A DNA stretch of 64,000 nt from the NCBI RefSeq assembly GCF_006345805.1, contig NC_042999.1, positions 137,020,001 to 137,084,000 of the forward strand, given 5' to 3'. Both the position numbers and the translations under genes were made by a program. Each line of letters begins with the position of its first letter. Position 1 is the stretch's first letter. The DNA comes from Octopus sinensis (taxonomy: Eukaryota). Shown one piece after another: positions 1 through 36,304 of the stretch. Under the pieces are notes generated by a model, which had not been told where the DNA came from, did no database searches, and saw nothing but the letters and a program-made list of their open reading frames with translations.

Positions 1-74
1 ATATATATATATATATATATATACACATACATATATATATATATACACATACATACACACACAGATATATATAT

Positions 75-111
<37 letters not shown>

Positions 112-365
112 CATATTCATACATACATATATATATATACACACATACATATTCATACATACATACACACACATACATACACACACACATATATACATAC
201 ACACATATATACATACACACACACATATACACATACACACACACATATATACATACATATATATATATATACACATACATATTCATACATACATATATAT
301 ATATACACACACACATTCATACATACATATATATATATACACACACACATACGTACATATATATA
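1..365. repeat. Compound (AT)/(AC) microsatellite
   Basis: Visible low-complexity tract. Similar tracts at 25640-25945, 42850-43010, 59106-59150 and 60899-60955. Confidence 0.95.
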
Positions 366-422
366 TAGGGAGATGTACTGGCATAGCAAGTGACCTGATC
401 TGAGATTGTGCGCTGGAACGAA

Positions 423-1416: not shown

Positions 1417-4400
1417 CTGCTGTACTGATAATAACATCATACAATGATAAAGGATCCTTAGCAGACCCTGGATGACCGCCATAGACACAAATTATCTTTA
1501 GGTTCCGTTCAATAATATTTTCAATATTTGTTGTATCAAATCTATAAAGACAAGAAACATTTTTTTTATGATTTGCAGTTATTTGTTAAGAAGTTTATGG
1601 AAGTATTAAATAGTAAAAATTGTATTGTTAATTTTTTTAATTCAATCAAATACATTTGCATTCTTATAATTTAAAAAACCTAAAAACTTTCATTAATAAC
1701 AAAATGTTAATTCAAAAAATAACACCATCAAAACTAGCTGCAACCACGTAGTACTATAACTACTACTGTTACTAATATTACTACCACCACTACAGTTGCC
1801 ACCTCCATAACTGTCACTATTACCACTACAGTTGCTACCTCCATGACTGTCACTATAAACACTACTACTACCACTCTCACACTTCACTTGTTACCTTTAC
1901 TACTTCCATCACATCCAAATATATTTCAGCATGTTCCCAATACAACATATTTATTTATTCAGCTGTAACAGTTTAAATTATTAAATGCTATTGTAATAAC
2001 CTTGCATAACAATACCAGGACTGCCAAAGAATACCAAGTGGCACACCACTTCCTGCTCACAGTGGGTGCTAGAAGTATTGTTGACAACCACCTGTTAGGA
2101 AGCTTAGGTCAGACTTGATCCAGCTGATGATGTATATTCAGAGATGTTCCAGCTATAAGCACCCAATATTTTATTCAGGTATTTAATTTATTTTACTTGT
2201 TTCACTCACTTGACTGCAGCCATGCTAGGGCACCACCTTGAAGGGTTTTAGTTGAACAAAACAACCCTAGGACTGTTTTTTTAAGCCTAGTACTTATTCT
2301 ACCAGTCTGTCAAATCTCTAAGTTACAACATCAACACCAACACTAATTGTCAAGCAGTGATGGGGGAATAAATACACACACACACACACAGCAGGCTTCT
2401 TCGAGCTTCTGTATACCAAATCCAAGGTTTTGCTCAGCCTGAGGCTATAATAAATGAACTTGCCCAAGGTGCCACACAATGGAACTGAACCCAGAACCAT
2501 GTGGTTAGGAAGCAAACTTCTTACTACACAGCTATGCTATGATTACATTATCCAATGTGCCCTTATCTTTTAAGATGACAAAGTATAAATATGATGGAGA
2601 TTCTGCTCTTATTTCTAGCAAGCCAGGCAGCAACATAATGGTTGGCTCAATGAGGACCACCAGAGAATGATGAACATGGTAGATGTGCTGTTGTTTCAGA
2701 TGTGTAACAGGTGTTGTACCCTCTGTTGGACACACAACAGAATTTGCAAAATAGAAACGCAAGCTATGGGTTGATGTTAGGAGTGAAGTTGTGTGAAGCT
2801 GTTAAATAATTAACAATGATTGTGAAATTAAAGTACTGGACTCCAAATCAAATAGCTATGTTAGTGTTAACATATTTAATGCAGGAAGAAGGAATAACTG
2901 TGTTGAAAAACTATACTAGTCTACAAACTAATGTTATTTTCATTCTTCCAGGCAAATATGGAAGACAACTCTGGATGTGTTTTAGTATTATTCTGACCTA
3001 ATCAGCAAATCATAATGTTCATCATAAATGTCAAAGCAGTAAAAACAATAATCACAAGTTAACTGTACAATACTGTACATTTGTTGGTACAGGAAAACAG
3101 AAATTGAATATCTCAGATGCCAAATCCAATAATCGAAATATAAAACCTTTCTATAACAGCTGTTAATATTAACTCTAGTAGGGCGGCAAGCTGACAGAAT
3201 TAGTAGCACACCAGGCAAAATGTTTAGTGGCATTTCATTCATCCTTATGTCCTGACTTCAAATTCTGCTAAGGTGAACTTTGCCTTACATCCTTTCAGGG
3301 TTTATTAAATAAGTACCAGTTGAGCAGTGGGGTCGATGTGATAGACTTAACTCCTACCTCATGAAATTACTGACCTTGCACCAAATTTTCTACCGAATAT
3401 TATCAGGTCATTAAGAATGAAATGTGTGATTTGGAACTGAAAGTTTATTTTACTTTATCTCAACAAAAAGCAATGCAGTTAATCAAAGTATGCATCTAAA
3501 TTATCAACACAATTTTGCTATTTTATCACTAGCTTATTTCTGCTGACAGTGAAGAATTCTGGAGAGCAAAAGGTGATGAAATCACAAAAGGCTGTTTTTG
3601 CATCATCAGATTTGAAGTTTTTTCCTTGCAAAAAGTTCTCTAATGCAGTGATTCCCAACATGGTCTCCAGAGAATTCGTAGCCATAAAAAAATTGAAGCC
3701 ATTTCAGATCTACACAATATTGTTTGATAATGAATGAAGACAGAATAATAATAAGAAAACAATATTCGATAATTATTCCATAAGAATCAATAATGTATAA
3801 TATATAATCAATAATATATTACAATCAAGAATTACATAACTTACATTTTACAATCACAACAGTTACATAATAAATCTGATATTTTTAATAGATCACTAGA
3901 CAATATTGTTTAATAATAAATTTGATACTTTTAATTTATAGAAATAGAGTATTATTTTTATTTGTAATAATGTCTGAAACAACTGCTAAAAAGGCAAAAC
4001 TACAAAGATTTTATCATGTTTGGTTTTGTATCTGTAGACTCAAAACCTATGTGTCTTGAATGTGATGCCATCATGACAAATCATTCCTTGAAGAAAGTTA
4101 AGCTAGAACAGCACCAGAAATTAAGACTTCCCTCATCTGTTGGTAAAGGTAGGGAATATTTTGAGAATAAAAAGAAAATACAGCCAATCAAACTACCCAA
4201 CTGAAAAAGCAAAGACACTCAAACCAAGTTATTTTGTCTCTGAAATTATTGGTAAGGTTGCAGTACCTCAGATTTATGGTGAGAAACTTGTCAAGCCTGC
4301 TATGATAGCTTGTGCAAATGAGGTTCTGGGAAAAGATGCTGCATCTACTCTGAGTACAATTCCACTTTCAAATAACACAATTACAAGAAGACAGGATGAA

Positions 4401-7400
4401 ATGTCTAATTTTGTTGAGAAGAAAATTGTAGAAATTCTCCAAAAGACAAATTTTTCTATCCCGGTTGATACTAGCACAATTCATAACCAAGCTATCCTTT
4501 TGGTCTATGTCAGATTCATCCATGAAGATGATATAAGGGAAGAAATGTTATTCATTAAAAGTTTGTCTGAAACTACTAATGAAGAAAATATATTCAATGA
4601 AGTAATGCAGTATTTTAATATAAATATTTCATAGACAAATTTGATCAACAAGGCTGATTTTTAAGAGTAAAGTCACCAGACAGGAACTTCTCAAATCATC
4701 GACATACAGTGTGTTCATTCGCCACATCTTCATCAAACATTTCCTTGGTTTTGAGCTGTCTGGGATGCATTGGTTCCATAACGTAGCTCAACACAAATTT
4801 TTGGATTCACAAAAATTGATTTACAAGAGAAAACTCACAGACACCATGAATTACATTTTGAAAAGTGATGATGTAACTCTTCAATGTTGCAAAACAAAGA
4901 ATTGTCAGGATAAGACATTAGAGTTAACAACTGTCAAACTTGGTGCATAAGAAAATTGGACATTTTATTCTTAATGACCTGATAACTCTGATATTTCTTG
5001 TTTGCTTCACGGACACCAGTTCCATTTGTATTTCATGTTTAGGTGGTTAGCAGTAGGAAATACATCAACAAATAAAGAAAACAGTAATATATAAATATCC
5101 AAAGTATTTGCAGATAAATGGATACAAACAGTAATAAACAGTAACAAAAAGAAAAGACGAACCTGGAAAATTTCTGATCTTTCAACTCATTTTGAATATA
5201 ATGGAATTGCTGCAAAGCCAACAGTACTTTGTCAACAATGAACAACACAGGACGTCTAGGATTTCGTTTTAACATATGAGAAATTACCATAATACTTATT
5301 AGAGTTTTACCAGTTCCTGTAAAAGAGCAATATAACAACAATAAATCTTCTCAGTGTTTTCTAATTTTTTTTTTCTTTTCTAATTCTACAATCTTCATGA
5401 CAAAATTCTAATGTAAAATAGCTTTCCTTTTTAGTTTCCTAAGTCAATATTCTTTTTTTAAAAAAATATTCTAACATTGGTTAGTATATGCTTAAGAAAT
5501 ATTAGGAGTGGAAGTAAATTCAGTACCTGTCCGATTTTGCAACTACAGTGAATTAATTTGCTTTTCATTTGACAACAAGCAATGCCACTGTTTTCACACT
5601 TCCTCTTATCGATCTTTTCTTTTGCTTTGTTACATTCATATTAGACATTCACCAATAATAATGACAGAACTTCTGAGGTTGAGTGACCTGCTAGAAATAA
5701 AATCCAAATCTCCCTCCTCGACAAATGATGTAGCTCTAATCATTTCAATGCCTCTTGTATTTTTTTTTCCTTATTCATTACAAGATAAAATTAAATATAT
5801 TATTAAAATAACATTTTTCACGTGTATGAGAGAGAATCGTGATGTTGTAGGAGAGAAATGTGTCCACATGGATGATGGTTCATTTGCACTAAACGAGGCT
5901 GCAAAGAGAGAGGTTTGGAAACGCCACTATGAAAGGTTGCTCAATAAAGAAAATGAATGGGAGAAAGAGTCTGCTGAATGTCAACCCAACAGAGGGACGA
6001 GCTATCCAAATTGACAGTACCTTGGTAGATAAAGCAATTAGGAGTATGAAGACAGGGAAAGACCCCGGCCCATCAGGAATCACTGCAGAAATGTTCAAAA
6101 TATCTGGCAGTGTTGGCTATAGCCTAGTCACCCGTATAGTTAACCAGGTGATACACGAAGGAGTCATACCCAATGACTGGTGTAGCAGCACCATAGTCAA
6201 CGCTCTAGATACAAATAACTACAGAGGTATCAAGTTGTTGGATCAGGTAATGAAGGTCACAGAGAGGGTCATAGCCCAACTAATTAGGGAGAGAGATGTT
6301 AAACGATGATGATGATGTTGTAATTGTGTATTATCAATTTCTATATTTTTTTATATGTGTATTGGTGCGTATTTTGTGTTTGTGTGTTTTGGTTAGAGAT
6401 TATAAAAGTAAAAGGATTTTGTCTATTTAGTTGTTTCGACAGTTTTCCATACTGTATGGTCCTATATTTGCATTACAGAATATTTTTTTATTGTTTTCAC
6501 GTTTTTTTTTAATTTATTGTTTGTCTGCCTTACAATGCAACATCTTTTCACTGCAAACTGCTAAAGATGCAAAGCAGTATTCGTGAACTGAAGTCAAACA
6601 CTTCATGTCTTAATTTATCGTTACCTGAAGTCAATTTCAGAGTAGTCATGCACTACCATTTTTGAACATACCAATCATACTTCTTTCCAAAAGAATAGTT
6701 CCTTTTACTGTTGAATAAACTTGCAGAGGGGAAGTTTCAACATCTTCTTTCAATTTCATTACACCATTTATGTGGCTGTTTCTGACAAGAAATTTCACTT
6801 TCATGTAAAACAACTATATTTTGTTGTCATTATCTGTAATCTACTCCCAAAACACTTCAGTAGCTCTACTTTGCATCATAAAAATGCAACAACCTCAACA
6901 ATAGCCAGACTTCTATTTGGTTTTGTAATTCTTAGGTTAATCAGAAACATAGTTTGCTGTGCATTATCCTTCTCGGTAGTTCAAAGCAACTTAAACCGTC
7001 CAAAAGATGGGTGCATTTGCTAGTTTTATATAAATACCTTTCAAACGGCATACCTTTCTATTCACACTCAAAATATTGAGTGTTTATGGGGAAGCCTGAA
7101 AAAGTGTATTATTCGACCTGAAATGAGACCTAGCCAACCCAGCGACTTCATTAGTTTCTTTTGGAGGCTGGAAGACTATACTCCTGTTCCTGATGACATG
7201 GAAGAATGTATACCGGTTCTTGATGTCGTTCACCAATAACTCCTATAAGGTACGTTGGCGCATTTTTTACACTTTAAAACATTCTTCTTACTCCCAACTA
7301 AGCTTATACTGTAAAACGTTCAATACAGGTCTTCCTACACCCATTAGGCTTGTTAACTTGCTTACTGGTGGCTCAGAGAACTTGTAATAATTAACCGAAA

Positions 7401-10400
7401 GTTTTAACAAATATGGGTGATATCAGACTGTCGTGAATATGCTAAAAACAACAGCTAAATTAGCCTTAACTTTTTCTAAAGTAAAACCATATTCAACACC
7501 ATATTTATCTTTTAAAAAACCTTTTTCTATTACTCAAACAAGAAAAAAATGAATCTAAGGTTTTTTTTTGGCGGGGGGGGGGGGGGCTGGACGACAGTCA
7601 GCCACCCGCTCCCTCAAAAAAAAACCAATCTTTCGGAATTTTTTTTTGCTTTCTCAGTGGATTCCTAGGTTTTTAATGATGCAGATTCCGAATATGCAAA
7701 AAAGAAATCACGTTTTTAAAATTCTAAATCCCCACCCCCAATTTTTTTATTTTAAACTTTTTTCGAAATTTTTTTTTTTCAATCTCCGTAGAAAAGTACG
7801 GAGATTTACAATATGGCAAACAAAAAATTAATTAATTTCAAATTCTATATGAAAAAATCCAACTTTGATCCACTCGGTGTGGATCAAATTTGGACTATGT
7901 AGATCCCGAGAATGTAGAAAGTTGGGGAGAAAATAATTCGGGGTTACTTTTGAGGACCGTTCCCTACTCGAGGGAGTATCGGAACAAGTCATCCGTATTT
8001 ATTTCATTTTCTCCGTTTTGTGCGTTTGTGCATCCGTAGATTTCTACTGAAGTCACAGGCAATGAAAGACAATTTTCTACGAATGTGTTATATTATGTAG
8101 ATTCTGAATACACAAAACTTTTGGGGAAAAGTGTTTTAGGAGGGGGTAGTGTGTGGAATTTCGGAAAATTCACCGGCGTCCACTTCAACTCGTCTTAATA
8201 CTTTTCAGAGTACGTAAATTACGATTATATCGGAATTTGATTTGACAAGAAAACTAGAACACTCACATACATACTAATCACTAATTTCTTCGAAATTTCA
8301 AGTTTCATTTTGTAGATATACGTGACATGTTAGTATGTACGTGTACGAGCCCACCAAATTTATTTTTCATATTAAATTCTGATATAGTCGTTAAAGAATA
8401 CGCACACCACCCGTTTTCGATCTAACCCTAACCGCCGAAAACAGGTAGTGTGTTGGCGAGCTGGCAGAAACGTTAGCACGCCAGGTGAAATGCGTTGCCG
8501 TATTTCGTCTGCCGCTACGTTCTGAGTTCAAATTCCGCCGAGGTCGACTTTGCCTTTCATCCTTTTTATTTTTTACTACTACTATTATTATTATTATTAT
8601 TATGAATTTTTTGAAAACTTTACCATATCTGTATTCTACACACGAGAATTCATACGAAACTTAACAGATCCTTCAATGGATCGATTATACAAAAATAGGA
8701 AAGACTTCCTGGCATAACTACGGATTTCTGCGCACACACACCCACCGACTTTGGATGATCATAATTTTCAGAAAAATGGATATTTTTTTAATGAAATTTT
8801 CTACAAATTTGTTATGTCACGTAGATTCCGAATACACAAAACTTTTGTGGGAAAGTGTTTTAGGAGGGGGGGTGAGGAATTTCGGAAAAGTCACCGGCTT
8901 TCACTTCAATTCGTCTTAACTTCCAAGAAAATAGATATTTTTTAATGAAATTTTCTACAAATATACCTCTGAGTACGTAGATTCTGAGAACCTAGGAATT
9001 TGGTGGAAAAACAATTGGGGGTTACTTTCGAGGAGCGTTCCCCACTCGGGGGAGTTTCAGAACAAGTCGTCCATATTAGTTTCATTTTCTCCGTATTGTG
9101 CGTTTGTGCATCCGTAGATTTCTACCGAAGCAGCTGGCAATGAAGCTTTCACCAGAAAACTAGTTATGCTAAAAATACTAGCTAAACAGAAAGACATTGA
9201 ATAGAATAATTCCGTTTGAACTGTTTGATTACATATATAATTGCGTGTGTGTGTGAGAGAGAGAGAGGGGGGGAGACTAGAAATCTACGGGTGCACAAAC
9301 GCACAAAAAGGAGAAAATGAAACTAATTTGGACTTGTTCCGTAACACCCCCGAGTTGAGAACGGTCCTCAAAAGTAACACCCAATTGTTTTCCCCCAAAA
9401 TTCCTATGTTCTCGGAATCTACATAGTCCCAGCTATATTTGTAGAAAATTTCATTAAAAAATATCTATTTTCTTGAAAGTTAAGACGAATTGAAGTGGAC
9501 GCCGGTAAATTTCCCGAAATTCCCCCACCCACCACTCCTAAAACACTTTCACCCAAAAGTTTTGTGTATTCGGAATCTACATGACATAACACATATTCGT
9601 AGGAAATTTCATTAAGAAATATCCATTTTTCTGAAAGTTATGATCATCCAAAGTCGGTGGGGGGAGGGGACAGGAATCTGTAGTTATGCCAAAAATAACA
9701 GCTACAGGTCTAATACAACTTATCTGTTGCATACGATCTTTAAAGGCGGAAAACACCAGAAGCAAAAATAAATAATATACATGCACAGTTAAATATAGAA
9801 GTGTAAGTTGTTATATAATCCCTATAGTAAATATATAATTCCTTGTTTGGACGTTTTTAATTACATGTGTGTGTGTGAGAGAGTTGTAGAAATCTATAGA
9901 TGCAAAAACACACAAAACGGAGAAAATGAAACTAATATGGACGACTTGTTCCGAAACACCCTCTAGTGGAGAACGGTCCTCAAAAATAACCCTCAGTTGC
10001 TCCCCCCCCATTCCAATGTTCTCGGAATCTACAAAGTCCAAGGTATATTTGTAGAGAATTTCGTTAAAAAATATCCATTTTCTTGAAAGTTAAGACGAAT
10101 TTAAGTGGACCCTGGTGAATTTTCCGAAATTCTCTACACCACCCCCTCTTAAAACACTTTCCCCCATAAGTTTTGTATATTCGAAATCTACATCATATAA
10201 CGTATATTCGGAGACAATTTCTTTTAAAATATATCCATTTTTCTGAAAGTTATGGTCATCCAAAGTCGGGGTGGGGGCAGAAATCGGTAAAGGTACCCAG
10301 AAATCTATAGTTATGCCGACTTCCTTTTGTATCCACCTATAATATATATTTTTTTAATATTAGACATGTTGGAAAATTGATTTCCTACTATGTCTTATAA

Positions 10401-12133
10401 TAATAATAATGATGAGAAAGTCATGAAAATTAGGAATTTCTATTTAAAAAAAAAAATTCATTTTTGTATCATGTATATTCATGTCCCAAGGTTAGGCAAA
10501 TTGGGACACGAATATACATAATACAGAAATCCTTACCAAATGTGCTAGTGAGTAACATCCCCATATAATACCGAAGCCATTACAAAACTGACAAGACCAC
10601 AAAAGGTATCTGTTAACGCGCAGACGACATCTCTATGTGTTATTTTTTTAAAATTTATGCTGGGGTACAAAAGGAAGTCTCCCCCCACCCCAAAAAAAAT
10701 CGGTGCGTGATTAAGGGTTATTTAGCTGTTATTTTTAACAGAGCTTACGACTCATATCCTCCTCATTTATCAGTTTGACATATTGAGGTTTTTCAAGATC
10801 TTTCTCCCCATAAATACATTTTTTTAAAATTCGTGTGAATTCCCGTGTGTAGAATATAAGTTCGTAAAAGTTTTCTGAAAATTCCAAAAAATAAATAAGT
10901 CATGAGGAGTTACAAGGCATACTTAAAACAGAATTCTGCCAAATTTCATTTTTTTAAAAATTACATATTCTCTGAAAGTTGAGTAAAAGCCATCTCGTGA
11001 ATTTTCCAACACCCCTCACCCCAACCCCAGAATTTTTTTTTAACGATATGATCAGAATCTACACCACCTGAACAAGGCCGGTTTGAGGTAATAGCAACTC
11101 GGGCGGTCGCCAGCAATTCCAGGGCCGGCCCTGCACCTAAAGCATAGTTGTAGAAAATTTCATTAAAAAGTATAAATTTTTCTGAAAGTTATGAGACAAC
11201 AAAGACGTGGGTGGGACACTTACTTTCGATTTAGTGAAAATTTAACTAGTCCTAGAATCGATGATTGCCCTAAAGAAACACTAAGTGAGAGAAAATTTTG
11301 TCTTGAATCTTATGGTTTTTCAAGTTTTTCTCTGTTTTTTTCGATTCTTATTACTTAAATCAAATGTTCGTGCTTTTTTAACCTTTGAAAATGAGCAAAT
11401 ATACAATATTTCTAGAACTATTTTTTTAAATATATTAAAAATGCAGAAAATATATCAAACCTGTGGGTAAAAATATAACGCTATCGTAACAATGAGATTT
11501 TTCGAACAATTCGGCTTGGTAACCTCTTGGAATTGAATCTGTCAAGCAATAAGCCTCATCGATAGGGTCTTCACAGTGGCGTACGATGGGGGGCAAATTA
11601 TAAAGTTTTGATGGTTGTTCGGAGACATTTTTGGAGTGTGCGCTACTTTGCAAATGAGAAGTTACAGCACTCGGACATTGAAGTTTTTTAGAACAAAGAA
11701 TACACTTATATCCTATTATCTCGCCGTTTTCATCTTCATAAACGCGTATAAATTCGTTATGATCTAAAGACGTGGGCTGTACTGAAACAATGTTCGGAAT
11801 GACTTCCGCCTGTCTAGTGTTCTCATCTTCTTCGCACGTCTGTGTCGTCTGCACGTTAACAGATACCGTTTGTGATCTTGCCGGTTCTGTAACGGCTTCG
11901 GTATTACATGGGGATACGTTACTCACTAGCACATTAGGTAAGGATGGGTATACCTGCTGTACATAACTTGCCGGTTCTACCTCCTGAATAGGTAGAGATG
12001 TGCAAAAACGTTCTCTATCAGAAAGTTTTTTTTTATGCTTCTTTCCCAATAAATGACTTTCTTTATGTTCTTTGGATGTATACTGGACGATACACAAATC
12101 GCACCTACCAAGGGTGGCCATTGTTGATGACAT
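1417..12133 (-). CDS. Dicer/RIG-I-like (SF2 DExD/H) helicase with two N-terminal matrin/U1-type C2H2 zinc fingers; 5' part only, continues beyond the left edge
   Basis: Exons 12133-11461, 5316-5163 and 1541-1417, all GT-AG and phase-compatible. Walker A is rebuilt across intron 1 (FLPT-G|GA-TGKTLISIMVI). Q-motif IPRGYQAEL, motif Ia VLFIVDKVLLALQQ and motif Ib YDVIISTAG are present. ZF1 CDLC-x12-H-x5-H and ZF2 CILC-x12-H-x5-H. ATG at 12133 or 12121. The DExH exon is not in the window. Confidence 0.88.
2192..2537 (-). mobile_element. Full-length tRNA-derived SINE
   Basis: Head, body and gcatggctgcagtcaagtgagtgaaacaag tail, homologous to 43020-43436. Confidence 0.75.
3403..4982 (-). mobile_element. 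Mariner-family element with intact TIRs and TA TSD; central part replaced by hAT sequence
   Basis: TA|tcaggtcattaagaatgaaatg ... cattttattcttaatgacctga|TA. Transposase remnants ENFLQGKNFKSDDAKTAFCDF (3540-3640) and an HTH-like FDEDVANEHTVCR..FEKFLSGDF (4660-4745). Confidence 0.8.
3970..4634 (+). pseudogene. hAT (Buster/ZBED5/SCAND3-like) transposase fragment
   Basis: BED-like CLECDAIM...KLEQH, then GEKLVKPA, IPLSNNTITRR and VRFI...EEMLF. Frameshift near 4200; truncated. Confidence 0.85.
5830..6312 (+). mobile_element. RTE-clade LINE RT fragment
   Basis: RENRDVVGEKCV...WKRHYERLLN and MKTGKDPGPSGITAEM...IPNDW...NYRGIKLL; frameshifted. Confidence 0.85.
7898..10320. repeat. Cluster of a ~380-bp repeat in mixed orientation (copies ~7898-8205 rearranged, 8740-9125 +, 9277-9660 -, 9885-10320 -)
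   Basis: Shared blocks gtagattc(c/t)gaatacacaaaactttt, cacttcaattcgtcttaac and ttcattttctccgttttgtgcgtttgtgcatccgtagatttctac. Weaker relics at 11150-11210 and 13130-13400. Confidence 0.85.
8455..8564 (+). mobile_element. tRNA-derived SINE head (ggcgagctggcagaaacgttagcacgcc family)
   Basis: B box gagttcaaattcc. Related copies at 3181-3400, 15822-16048 and 56190-56362. Confidence 0.75.
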
Positions 12134-13471: not shown

Positions 13472-16087
13472 CATGCCTCGTAGATCTGCTTAAGCTCTTT
13501 CATCTAGCAGAGCATTACAGGCTTGACCACCTGAATGTCCCAGAGTGGCCCCGGAATAATGGCGACGGAAGGCTCAAGTCTTACTTAGACAGGATAGTGA
13601 TAAGAACTAGAGATAAGGATAATTTTAGCTGTCCACAGCTTGTCCAAGTAGCGTACACTGACCATAAAATGGTTAAGTGTAGATTGGACATAGATAATAC
13701 AGTTAAGAGAGGATCCTGCTACTGGAAGCTAAACAAGTCTGTTTTGACTTGCAAGGCATATCGTAGGCGGATTAAGGAACTAGCACAGAGGGCGTTAACT
13801 GGTGGTGGTTCGCCCTCAAGAGAACCATTCGTTTCGAGTCTGATAGGTTTAGCCACCAGCTAAGGATAGAAGAGAAGGGCAACTAGTTAAGTACTTAGAG
13901 GAGGCGTTGAGGTTGGGCTCTGCATCCTACATTTTGGCAGCGAGAACGGCCCTGAACCATCACCTCAAAGCCAAACATGAAGGGTGCAGAGTTCGGGCTA
14001 AAGTGCGCGCATTGGGCCGTGAGGGAATTAATGTTGCATTATCCCAGGCAGGTCGATCTACGACAATCTCCATCTTATACGCTACTCCTTAGAGAGGGTG
14101 AGGAAAGTTTCTGGCACGGTGGGGTGGGGGCACTGGTACATTTGGACCAGTCTAAAGCATTTCATAGGGTCGACCATCAGTACTTGGCAGCGGTCCTCAA
14201 AGAGGCCGGCCTGGACCCGACCTTCCATGGTTGGATTGCTGCGTTGTACAGTGACATCGAATCTGTCGTGAAAGTGAATGGTTTCTTTTCGAAGTCATTC
14301 AAGTCCGAGCGCTCAGTGCGTCAGGGGTGTCCCCTATCTTCGCTTTTGTATGTATTGGCTTTTGAGCTATTGCTGCGGAAGTTGGAGGCACTAGGGGGTG
14401 TGCCGCATGATCTATGGTGTGGAAGAGGAACTACGGCGTATGCGAATGACATCTCCATCATCATGGTGGATAAGGGCCAACTTCCATTGGTAGAAGAGGC
14501 TATCAAAAGTTATGAGGCAGTGGCAGGAGCAAAGATTAACAAGGACAAGTCAGTCGGTTGCAACTCAGTACCTGGAGGGGCAAGCCGATGGCGTCCAATA
14601 ATGTCATGGGTCATTTGGACGGAAGGTTCTGTTAAGCTGCTCAGAGTCTGGGTTGGTCCAGACCTCTAGATAGAGAAAAATTAGAGTGAGGTGACCAGCT
14701 CTAACCCAGACCTGGTCTGGGAGGGCAGAGGTGGTGCAAATGTTCATAGCATCAGTAATTACCTACTATCTGACCGTGGTGCTTTGCCCCGATTTATGAC
14801 TGAACAAGATGGAGAGAATCCTTTTCTGCTTTTTGTGGAAGGGAGGAAAGCCATTTGTGAAGCACTCTGCTGCCAGAAACCGCTAAAGGTGGGCTAGGGA
14901 TGCCTTGGCTGAAGATGCGAAAATTCGCGTTATGGTTGAGGCACCTCTGGCTTTACCTGGATGGAGAGCAGGTGTGGTCACCACATGTCTGGTTCTATCT
15001 TCTGCAGTTAACGTCCTTAATGGACATTGGTACAGGGATCAAGCAGAGACCTAGCCTGGGAGACTAGCAGCTGCTCTATCGAGCGGGCAGTGCCAGCAAC
15101 AGGAGTTCCACCACGGATCTTTATAGCGGGTTAGTGGAGTTTATGTTCGAAGACACCTTGGGGGAGACCCTGGGCTACAAGGAAAATCAGTTGATCGACC
15201 TACTCAGAAGAGCTTTCGGCTAGAAATCCCTGGCTTGGCAGTGCTTCCGTGCAGCATTACCTGTTCATGATAAACTGTCAAGGCACGAAAGTGCCATCTC
15301 GCTGACATGTCCGAAGTGTGGGCAGGACAGGGAAACTGTCTTGCACGCATTCATAGAACAACTGTTGTCATCGATGGGAAGTGTACAGCTATCAGCTGAG
15401 TCTATCATCGAGATTGTGCCCCCTCCTTCCCTTAACAGAGAGAGGAAGGCTTACTTTTTCTGCGTAGTAGCCATACTGAAAGAAAGAGTATGGAAGACGC
15501 ATGTGAAAGGAATAGTGACAGGTACCTTTGTATCTGGCCATGGATTGGTTAACTTTTTTAATTACCACCTCAGTAGTAAGATCTGGTTGGAGAAGAGGTA
15601 CCAGTCATGAGAAAGATTCGATAAAAGATGGAAGTTTGTGGCAAGAAAGCTAGGTAAGTGGAGCCCCGGAAGAAAAGCAAAGGTTCTACCCTGATGGCAG
15701 GATGCCTTTCTTGTTGCAGTGTGTATCAAGATTTTTGATAAATTCATCATTCGATAAAATGAACTTTTTAATCGTCACAGCTTCTTTACTCCTTTATGTT
15801 TGTCCCATCCTTGTAATACCTATTTCTTTACTACCCACAAGGGGCTAAACACAGAGAGGACAAACAAGGACATACAAACGGATCAAGTCGTTTATATCGA
15901 CCCCAGTGCGTAATTGGTATTTATTTAATCGACCCCGAAAGGATGAAAGGCAAAGTCGACCCCGGTGGAATTTGAACTCAGAACTTAACAGCGGATGAAA
16001 CACCATAAAGCATTTCACCCGGCGTGCTAACGTTTCTGCCAGCTCGCCCATCCTTGTAATACCTGTATGGCAAATTTTAATGAAATA
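13472..16087 (+). mobile_element. Tx1/L1-clade LINE, 5'-truncated, degenerate, inserted in a SINE head
   Basis: Endonuclease end YLDRI...YTDHK...YWKLN, then IPGRSIYDNL, LDQSKAFHRVDH, VRQGCPLS, YAND (decayed YADD) and a CCHC-like C-terminus (CPKC...ETVLH). 16-bp TSD aagaag(c/t)ttgcttccc at 13456-13471 / 16088-16103. Confidence 0.88.
15822..16048 (-). mobile_element. tRNA-derived SINE (ggcgagctggcagaaacg family) nested in the Tx1 3' UTR
   Basis: Same head as the copy at 8455-8564. TSD (cc)catccttgtaatacct at 15804-15821 / 16047-16064. Confidence 0.82.
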
Positions 16088-33748: not shown

Positions 33749-36304
33749 AGTTAGTTAATTTTTTTGGCTCAAAAAGCAAGGCCATGTAGGGGGACATGGA
33801 GTTATGTACAGGGTGGTGTTCATGTAAAGAGTTCAGGCCACTTGAGGTCAAGGGAGACTTTGAACCGAGCGGTCATCGGCATCTTCACCATCTCGTCTGG
33901 CAGCTTATTCCACGGATCCGCAACCCGGACGGAGAAAGCCCCTCTCCTTCGATTGAGATGAAATCGTCGCAGATAGAGCTTTTCGGAATGACCCCGCAGC
34001 CGACGCTCTGGAGCAGGAGTGAAGAACAGCTCTTTCGAGAGGTTACATTTTCCGCTTATGATGTTGTGAGCAAGAATGAGATCTTCACGGCGTCGTCGTT
34101 TTTCTAGAGAATAAAGGTCGAGCGTCTTCAGCCTTTCTTCATAAGACAAATTATTGAGACCAAGAACCATGCGGGTAGCCAGCTTCTGGACTCTTTCGAG
34201 ATGCTGTATGTCTTTGAGGAGATAAGGAGAAGAGGCTTGAATCCCGTACTCCAATATGGGTCTCACCAGCGTGACATAGAGCGGTAGGAATATGGCTGCT
34301 GTGAGCATTCCGAATGACCGTCGAATCAAGAACAGAATTCCGCGTGCTTTGTTGGCAGCATGGATGCACTGGGCCGAAGGCGAAAAGGAGGAATCCATCA
34401 AGATACCCAGGTCCTTTACCTGATCGGTCCTCTCCAGCAGCAGACGACCCGGCTCGAAATCAAGTTGAGTTGCAGGAGGAGAGCCAACAGGCAGATGACA
34501 GCACTTTGACACGTTCAGACACAGGTCCCATTCGTTAGACCATCTCCAAATTTGGTGGAGGCATCGACGAAGATCCTCTATATCACCGCGAGGAGCGACC
34601 AGTTTGACATCGTCGGCAAATAGAAAGGTGTGTTGTGTGAGGTCGTCGGGCAAGTCATTTATGAAGACTATGAACAACAAGGGCCCAAGCACTGAACCTT
34701 GAGGCACGCCACTACTCGCACTGGAGACGTCGGACCGTGAACCATTAACTTGGACTTGGAAGGAGCGATCTGAGAGGAAGGCACCAACCCATCGTACAAT
34801 ATCCGGATGGAAACTATATGCTTGAAGCTTGACAAGTAATAGGTGGTGGTTTACCGAGTCAAAAGCTTTGGCAAAGTCCAATAAAACGATGTCAACAGCA
34901 TCACTATCATCGAGGATGCGCGTCACCAATTCTTCCATTACCAGTAAGTTGGTCAAGCATGATCTCTTCGGCACGAAGCCGTGTTGAGAATTAGAGATAG
35001 AGGCTGTGTTTTGGAGCTGGAGCATCATACTTTTCTTAAGGATGGTTTCGAACATCTTGCTTATTATTGATGTAAGGAAACCGGTCGGTAGTTAAGCGGG
35101 TCTTCGCGGCTCCCTTTCTTGAAAATTCGGCAGATTATCGCTGTTCTCCAGTCCGCAGGTATAACACCCGTCGCCAATGACATATTGAATAGACGTGTTA
35201 AGGGCTTGCAGATGACCGGAGCCAACGCTTTGATAACCCGTGGGTGTATGCCGTCAGGGCCGTGACCCTTGTTGACATCGAGGCCTTGAATAACGCGTTC
35301 GACTTCGTCCCGCGTGATGACCAATCGAAGCATTGGAGGTACCAAGATCGTTCAGAATTGTTTGAGCAATGGCATTAATGGGAAGGACAAGTGAGGGAGA
35401 ATCCAAACAGATTTTATCGTGCGCAGGTTTCGTAGCTAAATCTGCCCCACTGGAGTTTTGACTACGTTTCTTCTTTTTGGGAGAACAATGGTCTTCAGGT
35501 GGGTTTGAATCTACGCTCCTCAAATTAGGTTGGGGAACCTCCGGGACCGAAAAGGCAGATGAGGAAGAATCCGCACAGGAACGATCATGTGCGGAAACGA
35601 CCGCCGGTTCCTTCGCCTTCTTTGGCCGCTTCGATTTTGTTCCCTTCGGTTTGGACGTCTCCAGGGAAGAAATCAAGGGTGGCTCTGCGTCAAGAGTAGA
35701 CTGTTTATTCAGTAAATGAGCAACAACAGACTTTAGGTGCTCGACCTCTTGTTTGAGCAACAGCAACTGCTCGTTGAGATGACCGTTGGTAGGACCATCA
35801 TCCTGATGAGTAACTGACATGATAGATGGTTGACTAAAAACAATCTCCTATGGGCTCTAGGACAAATCTGGGTTAAAGCAGGAACAAAAACAGTTGCAAT
35901 CCTTGTAGGAGTAGGCAACAGCAGACAAAATCTGAGAGAGTTTGGGCTGAACCGAATCACAATCCAAGATTGAAAGCAGACGGTGAAACGAGTCAGGAAC
36001 CCTTCCTAGTTGTCTGAAGCAGCTTTAGGATAAGGAATAGTAGGTCCAACTTTAGAATGTTGATATGCATGAAAAATGTTTCACACGGTTAAATATCATT
36101 TGACGTGCCACTTAGTACTTCAATATTTGCGTCTGCGTATGTGTGAATAATGTGTTTATGTGCGAGAAGGCACATGTTTTTGTCTACCGTTAATTTAATT
36201 TTTTTTTTCTCACGTTTTTCCCTTTTAAAATATTTCTTTTTAAAGTAATTTATACGCTGGAGGGAGGGCTGAGTGTTTGTTTTTACTGTAAATTCTCTTT
36301 TCTC
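33749..36304 (-). mobile_element. CR1-clade non-LTR retrotransposon, internally deleted (5' UTR + partial ORF1 + RT), left-arm specific
   Basis: RT motifs QHGF, DFAKAFDSV, GVPQGSVLGP and FADD, plus the CR1-type C-terminus LRGHSEKL...FSVRVADPWNKLP (ORF 33820-35055). The upstream RT part (35064-35345) is separated by a 1-nt frameshift. A coiled-coil ORF1-like ORF lies at 35254-35820 and no endonuclease is present. The 3' tail is (TAAC)n. A 4-bp TGTT duplication (33745-33748 / 36305-36308) is seen against the empty site at 36701-36715. Confidence 0.92.

What the first reader, a model, noticed from the sequence alone, without database searches (positions are those of the whole stretch)
1417..12133. 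Dicer/RIG-I-family helicase with tandem matrin/U1-type zinc fingers in place of CARDs
Seen: exon 1 encodes two C-x2-C-x12-H-x5-H fingers and a low-complexity linker. It splices in frame into a Hel1 domain with Q-motif PRGYQ, PTGTGKT split by the intron, LFIVDKVLLALQQ and DVIISTAG. Known: this finger spacing is the JAZ/ZNF346/matrin type, members of which bind dsRNA. RIG-I/MDA5 carry N-terminal CARDs, LGP2 has none, and Dicers have no such fingers. Inference: an unusual invertebrate dsRNA sensor or Dicer-related helicase with an extra RNA-binding module, notable in a lineage known for extensive A-to-I editing. The ORF track hides it because the Walker A motif is split over a 6-kb intron.
Basis: partly seen in the sequence, partly recalled or inferred. 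Interest (0 to 1): 0.75.

Follow-up and report, generated by a model that had tools for sequence, protein, structure and literature searches.

The report
Octopus zinc-finger dsRNA helicase, HelF-like
The window holds the first three exons of a real octopus gene that joins two dsRNA-type zinc fingers to a Dicer/RIG-I-superfamily helicase; it belongs to an old, widespread but unstudied animal gene family that is closest to the amoeba RNAi regulator HelF, and is neither a RIG-I-like receptor nor a Dicer.

Summary
Three minus-strand exons (12133-11461, 5316-5163, 1541-1417) join in frame through GT/AG introns. They encode two C-x2-C-x12-H-x5-H fingers, a disordered linker, and the Q motif, Walker A and motif Ia of an SF2 helicase.

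The complete protein is 732 aa in Octopus vulgaris, already annotated there as "dicer 2-1". It stops directly after Hel2, with no CARD, RIG-I C-terminal domain, PAZ or RNase III.

It belongs to a discrete orthogroup found in more than 25 molluscs, a nemertean, a flatworm, hemichordates, crinoids, a coral and a sponge. Members carry 1-13 zf-met/JAZ fingers; the coral protein also has a Z-alpha domain. The helicase is always C-terminal.

Neighbour-joining trees place the group with protist dsRBD-helicases, including Dictyostelium HelF, an RNAi suppressor (88/100). It never groups with RLRs or insect Dicer-2 (0/100).

The likely function is a non-signalling, dsRNA-tethered ATPase that modulates RNAi or dsRNA metabolism. 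This is inferred, not shown. I found no paper describing the family.

One extra observation: a ~100-bp inverted copy of exon 1 in intron 1 should form a long duplex in the pre-mRNA.

The parts
11461..12133 (-). Coding exon 1: start codon, finger 1, linker, finger 2, Q motif, first half of Walker A (residues 1-224 plus the first base of codon 225)
   Evidence: Continuous ORF from the first in-frame ATG; GT donor at 11460-11459. 312/317 residues identical to O. vulgaris P0002.
12035..12103 (-). Zinc finger 1, C11-x2-C14-x12-H27-x5-H33 (zf-met/JAZ type, 'HLLGKKH')
   Evidence: Pfam zf-met residues 10-33 and zf-C2H2_jaz 11-34. Best PDB match is ZFa 1zu1, E=0.0015, then ZNF346. Model pLDDT about 80-87.
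11714..12034 (-). Linker, residues 34-140: predicted disordered, fast-evolving, with in-frame indels between species
   Evidence: pLDDT below 50 for residues 41-139. Identity to O. bimaculoides 62% and to Argonauta 28%. dN 0.139, dS 0.059.
11636..11704 (-). Zinc finger 2, C144-x2-C147-x12-H160-x5-H166: the helicase-proximal finger, conserved throughout the family
   Evidence: Second zf-met stretch; zf-C2H2_2 at residues 141-172. Aligned with fingers of sponge, hemichordate, coral and mollusc members.
11516..11530 (-). Q motif P202-R-G-Y-Q206
   Evidence: R203, Y205 and Q206 are invariant in the 9-sequence family alignment; Y205 and Q206 also in the 18-sequence one, where R203 is 90% or more.
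5317..11460 (-). Intron 1 (6144 nt, phase 1), splitting the Gly225 codon of the Walker A motif; full of repeats
   Evidence: GT...AG. The same split is found in O. bimaculoides L001 and Argonauta L002.
5163..5316 (-). Coding exon 2: rest of Walker A (GTGKT) and motif Ia (LFIVDKVLLALQQ)
   Evidence: The O. bimaculoides copy has a 10-N gap exactly here, which broke that species' gene model.
1542..5162 (-). Intron 2 (3621 nt)
   Evidence: GT at 5162-5161, AG at 1543-1542.
1417..1541 (-). Coding exon 3: ...NIENIIERNLKIICVYGG...DVIISTA plus the first base of a Val codon; GT donor at 1416-1415
   Evidence: The last exon lies beyond the window's left edge (in O. bimaculoides, 16 kb further on).
11843..11945 (-). 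Exon arm of an exon-intron inverted repeat (inside the linker coding sequence)
10529..10629 (-). Intron arm of the inverted repeat: reverse complement of 11843-11945, 89% identity
   Evidence: Predicted duplex -168 kcal/mol against -51 +/- 3.5 for shuffled arms.

Best explanation
The locus is the 5' three-quarters (by exon count) of the Octopus vulgaris/sinensis-type orthologue of an unnamed, ancient metazoan gene family. The family architecture is one to thirteen zf-met/JAZ-type zinc fingers, followed by a duplex-RNA-activated-ATPase helicase (Hel1, an all-helical insertion, Hel2, one long C-terminal helix), and then the stop codon.

Shown:
- the gene structure;
- the fusion of fingers and helicase in one exon and one ORF;
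- intact ATPase motifs (Q, I, Ia here; DEVH, TASP, V and QMRGRARK in the orthologues);
- a helicase fold like RIG-I/MDA5/LGP2;
- absence of CARD, RLR C-terminal domain, PAZ and RNase III;
- family membership, and placement next to protist HelF-type helicases.

Inferred mechanism:
- The fingers bind A-form duplex RNA without sequence specificity, as ZFa and JAZ/ZNF346 do, and tether the protein to dsRNA.
- The helicase core clamps the duplex and hydrolyses ATP, translocating or remodelling rather than signalling, because there is no signalling or nuclease domain.
- The protein therefore acts as a cofactor or regulator of RNA silencing and dsRNA metabolism. It either limits access of Dicer/ADAR to dsRNA, as Dictyostelium HelF and vertebrate LGP2 do, or feeds dsRNA to them.
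For: Gene model.

Orthologous full-length proteins with the same fusion: O. vulgaris P0002, 732 aa, 98% identical over the window part; Argonauta hians P0003, with the same four exons. Intron-less Logan contigs of 3.5-5 kb carry fingers plus helicase in a single ORF (P0191, P0234, P0219). These are most simply read as transcripts.

Family:
- The exhaustive HMMER search gives 99 representatives below 1e-30.
- Finger-bearing members have 1-13 fingers, and the helicase ends 0-13 residues before the C-terminus in all but three of them.
- The profile search shows a clean score gap: family members score 348 bits or more, and the next hit, MDA5, scores 227 bits.

Domains. The coral member adds a Z-alpha domain.

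Structure: AF2 pLDDT 77.8. Foldseek finds RIG-I, MDA5 and LGP2 at E about 1e-27 over about 555-585 columns.

Phylogeny (NJ, 100 bootstraps):
- family 90;
- family plus HelF-like protist helicases 88;
- family plus RLR 0;
- family plus Dicer-2 0.
An earlier, larger tree agrees.

Scores for the same query point the same way. HelF-like and RdRP-fused helicases score 165-180 bits; the best Dicer or RLR in the PDB scores 105 bits or less.

HelF is a dsRBD plus helicase protein, 837 aa, Q86L44 (PMC4894637). Its deletion makes cells hypersensitive to RNAi (PMC2175303, citing Popova et al. 2006).
Against: - No RNA-seq, protein or functional data were available for any family member, so dsRNA binding, ATPase activity and a role in RNAi are all inference.
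- The last exon is outside the window, so intactness of the gene in this genome is shown only for 317 codons.
- The trees are neighbour-joining on about 470 columns, with no animal Dicer-1 or nematode DRH sequences. Deep nodes are only moderately supported (51-60 for some).
- Finger 2 is a weak zf-met match on its own: its best PDB hits are ordinary C2H2 fingers, and ZFa scores only E=1.8.
- The Hel2i-like insertion is recognised only by fold, not by Pfam RIG-I_C.
- HelF's role in an amoeba need not transfer to animals.
Confidence: 0.6

Rival explanations
1. It is a true RIG-I-like receptor variant: a cytosolic dsRNA sensor in which the zinc fingers replace both CARDs and C-terminal domain, and which signals through an unknown partner.
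For: - The fold matches RIG-I, MDA5 and LGP2 best.
- NCBI names several orthologues 'RIG-I-like' or 'DHX58-like'.
- The coral orthologue carries a Z-alpha domain, which is known from ADAR1 and other nucleic-acid sensors.
- 'DVIISTA' resembles a stretch of MDA5 (from my own knowledge, not tested).
Against: - There is no RLR C-terminal domain, no second pincer helix and no CARD or death-fold domain.
- It groups with RLRs in 0/100 bootstraps.
- The profile score gap separates it from MDA5.
- Nothing in the protein could recruit an adaptor.
Confidence: 0.15
2. It is a trans-acting replacement for a lost Dicer helicase function. Molluscs lack Dicer-2 and their Dicer-1 helicase motif II has drifted. 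This stand-alone active helicase would dock on Dicer-1 and supply ATP-driven dsRNA threading, as DRH-1 does for C. elegans Dicer.
For: - Mollusca lack DICER2, and the DECH box of mollusc DICER1 has diverged (PMC11114477).
- C. elegans Dicer relies on DRH-1 and RDE-4 for these activities (PMC11095941).
- This family keeps all ATPase motifs.
- Annotators' best hits were to Dicer-2 or Dicer-like proteins.
Against: - There is no interaction evidence.
- The family also exists in cnidarians and flatworms, lineages reported to have Dicer-2 (PMC11114477; members).
- The tree does not derive it from Dicer-2 (0/100).
- The nearest characterised relative, HelF, suppresses rather than promotes RNAi.
Confidence: 0.2
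3. These are two separate genes: a small zinc-finger protein and a helicase with its own first exon, as in the O. bimaculoides annotation (239-aa and 499-aa models).
For: The O. bimaculoides RefSeq/GenBank models are split in this way.
Against: - The finger exon itself encodes the Q motif and 'LPTG'.
- The O. bimaculoides split coincides with a 10-N assembly gap inside exon 2.
- Reading through the donor gives a stop after 8 codons.
- The O. vulgaris and Argonauta models, and the intron-less Logan contigs, join the two parts.
Confidence: 0.03

Closest known systems
Dictyostelium discoideum HelF (Q86L44, DDB_G0294407)
   Same: It is a stand-alone Dicer-type helicase preceded by a dsRNA-binding module, with no nuclease. 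It is the nearest characterised relative by HMMER score (its cluster representative scores 166 bits) and in NJ trees (88/100 for the joint clade).
   Different: HelF uses a dsRBD rather than zinc fingers and has a tail of about 100 residues after the helicase core. It is a protist protein. Its role as an RNAi suppressor (PMC2175303) is untested in animals.
RIG-I-like receptors, especially LGP2 (DHX58)
   Same: Same Hel1-insertion-Hel2 fold. Like LGP2, it has no CARDs. A regulatory rather than signalling role is plausible.
   Different: It has no zinc-binding C-terminal RNA-end-recognition domain and no second pincer helix. It forms a separate clade. RNA recognition is moved to N-terminal fingers.
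Dicer helicase domain / insect Dicer-2 / reconstructed ancestral Dicer helicase (AncD1D2)
   Same: AncD1D2 gives the best PDB sequence match (105 bits over the whole core). ATPase motifs are intact, as in Dicer-2.
   Different: It has no Dicer dimerisation domain, PAZ, RNase III or dsRBD, and is 732 aa against more than 1600 aa. It does not group with Dicer-2. The database name 'dicer 2-1' is misleading.
dsRNA-binding zinc-finger proteins ZFa (Xenopus) and JAZ/ZNF346
   Same: The same C-x2-C-x12-H-x5-H finger with long linkers between fingers. Finger 1 matches ZFa at E=0.0015. Pfam zf-met and zf-C2H2_jaz both match.
   Different: Those proteins are fingers only. Here the fingers are fused to an ATPase.
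Unnamed orthogroup, e.g. Lottia gigantea V4BFR5 (LOTGIDRAFT_170548), Aplysia LOC101845957, Mytilus 'RIG-I-like' 990 aa, Oscarella pearsei EP00118_P003783, Montipora XP_068758337
   Same: These are true orthologues or paralogues: proximal finger plus helicase, with the same C-terminal end.
   Different: Most have far more fingers (5-13 in other molluscs) and are 1400-2000 aa. The coral form adds Z-alpha. Octopods have only two fingers and a long disordered linker.

Membership tests
RIG-I-like receptors | SF2 helicase core with Hel1, Hel2i insertion and Hel2 | tested here: met
   AF2 model and Foldseek: RIG-I, MDA5 and LGP2 at E about 1e-27 over about 555-585 columns. The insertion is recognised by fold only.
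RIG-I-like receptors | Pincer plus zinc-binding C-terminal regulatory domain (Pfam RIG-I_C-RD, PF11648) | tested here: not met
   Full-length orthologues end 0-13 residues after the helicase core and give no PF11648 hit. Only one C-terminal helix is present.
RIG-I-like receptors | Placement inside the RLR clade | tested here: not met
   Family plus RLR recovered in 0/100 NJ bootstraps.
RIG-I-like receptors | N-terminal tandem CARDs (RIG-I, MDA5) | tested here: not met
   The N-terminus is two zinc fingers and a disordered linker.
Dicer | Dicer dimerisation domain, PAZ and two RNase III domains after the helicase | tested here: not met
   No such Pfam hits in P0001 or in 16 family relatives scanned. 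The protein stops after Hel2.
HelF-like stand-alone Dicer-type helicases | dsRNA-binding module N-terminal to a nuclease-less DRA helicase, grouping with HelF | tested here: met
   Architecture. Joint clade 88/100. The module is zf-met rather than dsRBD, so this is membership of a wider group, not orthology proven.
HelF-like stand-alone Dicer-type helicases | Negative regulation of RNAi | not testable with these tools
   Known only for Dictyostelium (PMC2175303).
zf-met / JAZ dsRNA-binding zinc fingers | C-x2-C-x12-H-x5-H spacing and a profile match above threshold | tested here: met
   Both fingers have the spacing. zf-met scores 24.0 bits against a cut-off of 21.2, with 2 stretches. Finger 1 matches ZFa at E=0.0015. 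Finger 2 alone is weak.
zf-met / JAZ dsRNA-binding zinc fingers | Binding of A-form dsRNA | not testable with these tools
   Needs EMSA or similar.
Metazoan zf-met-helicase orthogroup (unnamed) | Helicase-proximal zf-met finger, DRA core, C-terminal end right after Hel2, profile score above the family gap | tested here: met
   P0002 scores 815 bits against a family floor of 348 and a next-best hit of 227. Alignments. Clade support 85-90/100.
FANCM / Hef | Closest similarity to ERCC4-related helicases | tested here: not met
   Hef 59 bits and FANCM 47 bits against 100-105 bits for Dicer and LGP2. Used as the outgroup in the trees.

The most novel reading that the evidence does not exclude
Animals would have a third, so far undescribed branch of duplex-RNA-activated helicases beside Dicers and RLRs. 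This branch descends from the same stock as protist HelF-type RNAi regulators. It was not seen in vertebrates, insects or nematodes among the hits I could name.

It finds dsRNA with arrays of JAZ-type zinc fingers (Z-alpha in corals) instead of a C-terminal domain.

In molluscs, which lack Dicer-2, it would be the missing ATP-driven dsRNA motor or gatekeeper. It would decide whether long dsRNA goes to Dicer, to ADAR or to neither.

In octopus its own pre-mRNA carries a 100-bp exon-intron duplex, which could make it self-regulated through the pathway it serves.
Probability: 0.3. Interest if true: 0.75.

Novelty: new variant of a known kind. Interest (0 to 1): 0.55.

Why it matters
Surveys of invertebrate antiviral and RNAi genes define RLRs by the C-terminal domain and Dicers by RNase III (for example PMC9334734 and PMC11114477). 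This family therefore falls between the two and has been ignored or mislabelled, as 'dicer 2-1', 'RIG-I-like', 'DHX58-like' or 'Dicer homolog 3a-like'.

The family is old: it is present in a sponge, a coral, a flatworm, molluscs, a nemertean, hemichordates and crinoids. It keeps an apparently active ATPase. In different lineages the helicase is joined to three different duplex-binding modules: zf-met fingers, Z-alpha, and (in protist relatives) dsRBDs. That pattern is a strong hint that duplex RNA is its substrate.

If the family regulates RNAi or dsRNA sensing, it fills a gap in understanding how lophotrochozoans handle long dsRNA. For the octopus locus itself the news is modest: it is an ordinary, already annotated, finger-poor member of the family.

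Tried and rejected
- A first protein search with the 318-aa window product found only the truncated O. bimaculoides model. The full-length O. vulgaris protein appeared only when the helicase was used as the query.
- Fetching the O. vulgaris locus by protein identity failed because it is not on record. The last exon, and the intronic repeat in that species, could therefore not be checked.
- The O. bimaculoides locus is 34% N. The stretch that would hold the intronic repeat arm lies in an N run.
- Nine paper searches did not turn up any description of a zf-met-helicase family. Popova et al. 2006 on HelF is not held and is cited through PMC2175303.
- Rfam finds nothing in the window.
- Nucleotide identity to O. 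bimaculoides does not separate exons from introns: both are 81-90%. Coding evidence therefore rests on ORF maintenance, dN/dS and deep orthologues.
- The alternative first exon of the O. bimaculoides model ('MVVYDHSEIDF') has only a weak match in the window (6659-6624, E=0.35). I treat it as an annotation artefact.
- Hef/FANCM membership was considered and rejected on score.

Full report
OBSERVATION

On the minus strand, an ORF beginning at the first in-frame ATG (12133) runs to 11461 and is followed by GT. It encodes:
- finger 1, C11-x2-C14-x12-H27-x5-H33;
- a linker of about 107 residues;
- finger 2, C144-x2-C147-x12-H160-x5-H166;
- P202-R-G-Y-Q206;
- ...VIFLPTG.

The exon ends after the first base of the Gly225 codon. 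After a 6144-nt intron, an AG precedes 5316. Exon 2 (5316-5163) completes P-T-G-T-G-K-T and carries LFIVDKVLLALQQ. After a 3621-nt intron, exon 3 (1541-1417) encodes ...IICVYGGHPGSAKDPLSLYDVIISTA and ends in a split codon followed by GT. The spliced frame is continuous.

Pfam finds ResIII (E=5e-9), zf-met (24.0 bits against a cut-off of 21.2, two stretches) and, below its threshold, zf-C2H2_jaz. The one exception is the last 'G' of 'DVIISTAG', which was read across the donor; in the orthologues the residue is Val.

ONE GENE, NOT TWO

The only close hit to the window product was O. bimaculoides LOC128246994, a 499-aa model that lacks the fingers and Walker A. Its locus (L001) shows why:
- The finger exon is there, with the same reading frame, the same Q motif and the same 'LPTG|gt' end, but it is annotated as a separate 239-aa gene.
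- Exon 2 contains a 10-N assembly gap right after 'ggaactggtaaaactc'.

The O. vulgaris protein 'dicer 2-1' (P0002, 732 aa) has the full architecture and is 312/317 identical to the window product. The window is therefore O. vulgaris, or a very close relative such as O. sinensis.

Argonauta hians has a 787-aa orthologue with the same four coding exons and the same split P-loop in an 11-kb gene. All eight zinc ligands are conserved in the four octopods, whereas the linker is only 28-62% identical and has in-frame indels.

Against O. bimaculoides, dN/dS is 0.14 from finger 2 to the P-loop. Short intron-less Logan contigs (3.5-5 kb) from other species encode fingers and helicase in one ORF. I read these as transcripts.

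THE WHOLE PROTEIN

The fourth exon lies outside the window; in O. bimaculoides it is 416 codons. It supplies VIDEVHH (motif II), TASP (III), TSVAEEGVD (V) and QMRGRARK (VI), and then the protein stops.

In a nine-sequence alignment from octopus to sponge, all members end within a few residues of each other. Among 200 relatives, those with fingers have 0-13 residues after the helicase core, with three exceptions.

An AlphaFold model built on the 9-sequence alignment has mean pLDDT 77.8. It shows:
- both fingers folded;
- residues 41-139 disordered;
- Hel1, an all-helical insertion (about 430-580) and Hel2;
- a single long C-terminal helix (702-729).

Foldseek's best PDB matches are RIG-I, MDA5 and LGP2 helicases (E about 1e-27, about 555-585 aligned columns).

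By sequence the best solved relatives are a reconstructed ancestral Dicer helicase (105 bits), Arabidopsis DCL1, LGP2, RIG-I, MDA5, human Dicer and Drosophila Dicer-2. Hef and FANCM score far lower. No Pfam model for CARD, RIG-I C-terminal domain, Dicer dimerisation, PAZ or RNase III matches.

THE FAMILY

An exhaustive HMMER scan with P0002 found 99 cluster representatives below 1e-30. The top ones are long mollusc proteins in which the helicase sits at the very C-terminus behind many fingers. Examples are Haliotis asinina (1841 aa, 13 finger patterns), Lottia V4BFR5 (1573 aa), Argopecten, Mercenaria, Dreissena and Potamilus.

Members outside Mollusca:
- Lineus (Nemertea);
- Macrostomum (flatworm);
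- Ptychodera and Glandiceps (hemichordates);
- Antedon and Anneissia (crinoids);
- Montipora (coral), with Z-alpha plus zf-met/JAZ plus helicase;
- Oscarella pearsei (sponge), with four fingers.

A profile search shows a clean gap. Members score 348 bits or more; the next hits are vertebrate MDA5 (227 bits) and insect Dicer-2 (about 200 bits). Database names are 'uncharacterized', 'RNA helicase', 'dicer 2-1', 'dicer-like protein 1', 'DCL2-like', 'RIG-I-like', 'DHX58-like' and 'Dicer homolog 3a-like'.

I saw no vertebrate, insect or nematode member among the hits that carry names. This is a soft negative.

RELATIONSHIPS

The nearest non-members are protist proteins:
- dsRBD-helicases of Amoebozoa, namely Cavostelium, Phalansterium and Dictyostelium Q86L44;
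- a Balamuthia helicase-dsRBD protein;
- RdRPs with an N-terminal helicase, from Pelomyxa and Pythium.

Q86L44 is HelF (837 aa; dsRBD, DEXDc, HELICc; PMC4894637). Deletion of helF makes Dictyostelium hypersensitive to RNAi (PMC2175303, citing Popova et al. 2006, 'a nuclear suppressor of RNAi').

Neighbour-joining trees of the helicase core, 100 bootstraps each:

| Grouping | 128 taxa | 87 taxa, with vertebrate MDA5 and insect Dicer-2 |
|---|---|---|
| Finger family | 85 | 90 |
| Molluscs | 95 | not tested |
| Cephalopods | 100 | not tested |
| Family + nearest protists + HelF-like | 72 | 88 |
| Family + RLR | 0 | 0 |
| Family + Dicer-2 | not tested | 0 |

Mean distances from the family rise in this order: HelF-like 1.65, RdRP-fused 1.79, other Dicers 1.97, RLR 2.09, Dicer-2 2.16, Hef 2.35.

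These are distance trees without animal Dicer-1 or nematode DRHs, so the deep topology is provisional.

MECHANISM

Shown: an intact-looking ATPase of the duplex-RNA-activated class, fused to fingers of the dsRNA-binding type, with no nuclease, no end-recognition domain and no signalling domain.

Inferred:
- The fingers tether the enzyme to A-form duplex. Finger 1 resembles ZFa and ZNF346; finger 2 is weaker on its own.
- The core clamps the duplex and hydrolyses ATP.

Related helicases in other lineages carry Z-alpha or dsRBDs at the same position. This argues that duplex RNA is the substrate.

By analogy with HelF, LGP2 (PMC5813259) and DRH-1 (PMC11095941), I favour a regulator or cofactor of RNA silencing and dsRNA handling over a signalling receptor. 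Whether it inhibits or assists Dicer cannot be decided here.

Mollusca lack Dicer-2 and have a drifted Dicer-1 DECH box (PMC11114477). That makes the 'helicase in trans' idea attractive. However, the family also occurs in lineages reported to have Dicer-2.

NOVELTY

The octopus gene is already in GenBank, under a misleading name, and the orthogroup is widely catalogued.

On the other hand, nine literature searches found no description of the family. Immune-gene surveys that define RLRs by their C-terminal domain do not list it; for example, Aplysia LOC101845957 is absent from PMC9334734.

I class it as a new variant of a known kind: a DRA helicase of the HelF type with zinc-finger RNA-binding modules. 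The interest is moderate, and it lies in the family rather than in this locus.

SEEN IN PASSING

A 103-nt stretch of exon 1 (11843-11945, linker codons about 63-97) recurs reverse-complemented in intron 1 (10529-10629) at 89% identity.
- There are only these two copies in the window.
- In the 73-nt ungapped core, 6 of 8 differences still give G.U pairs.
- The predicted duplex is -168 kcal/mol against -51 +/- 3.5 for shuffled arms.
- It is absent in Argonauta and cannot be checked in O. bimaculoides, where the region is an N run.

The linker has dN 0.139 but dS only 0.059, with small counts. Both features would fit an ADAR-substrate structure, but no RNA data were available to test this.

Noticed in passing
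window 11843-11945 and 10529-10629: Exon-intron inverted repeat. A 103-nt piece of the exon 1 coding sequence is repeated reverse-complemented 1.2 kb downstream in intron 1 (89% identity). The predicted pre-mRNA duplex is about 100 bp, -168 kcal/mol against -51 for shuffled arms. This is a candidate ADAR substrate or editing-complementary sequence in the transcript of a dsRNA-binding helicase. It is not found in Argonauta; the O. bimaculoides counterpart lies in an N run.
   Followed up: partly
window 11714-12034 (linker codons 34-140): Against O. bimaculoides the linker has dN 0.139 and dS 0.059 (27.5 nonsynonymous and 3.5 synonymous differences). The adjacent finger 2 to P-loop segment has dN 0.036 and dS 0.25. 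The unusually low synonymous divergence overlaps the exon arm of the duplex. Counts are small.
   Followed up: partly
L001 16208-16217 and 4650-9061 (O. bimaculoides GCA_001194135.2, CM046603.1): The O. bimaculoides gene models are wrong. A 10-N gap inside exon 2 removed the P-loop, so the finger exon was called as a separate 239-aa gene and the helicase (LOC128246994, 499 aa) was given a spurious first exon.
   Followed up: yes
window 33820-35055 (-), 13977-14669 (+), 5508-6309 (+): Retroelement remains. Two ORFs match Pfam reverse transcriptase RVT_1 (1e-27 and 8e-15), and a further ORF pair that reads like a reverse transcriptase but has no Pfam hit lies inside intron 1. The rest of the window (12-64 kb) shows no other ORF of 130 codons or more with a recognisable domain, and no Rfam family.
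   Followed up: partly
window 8900-10260 (intron 1): Several direct and inverted copies of a short dispersed repeat (arms of 56-125 nt at 84-93%; small ORFs reading 'MDDHNFQKNGYF...'). The same element occurs in the O. bimaculoides intron. It is probably an octopus SINE or MITE family.
   Followed up: no
window 1-400: The left end of the window is a long (TA)n/(TG)n-rich microsatellite-like stretch.
   Followed up: no
P0072 / P0199-P0208 (Montipora), P0241: The coral members of the family carry an ADAR-type Z-alpha domain upstream of the zf-met/JAZ finger and helicase. I did not find this domain combination described.
   Followed up: partly
P0059, P0194, P0195 (Dreissena polymorpha): The Dreissena members have an extra tail of 436-543 residues after the helicase, unlike the rest of the family, and there are two loci. 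Babylonia and Nucella also have two paralogues.
   Followed up: no
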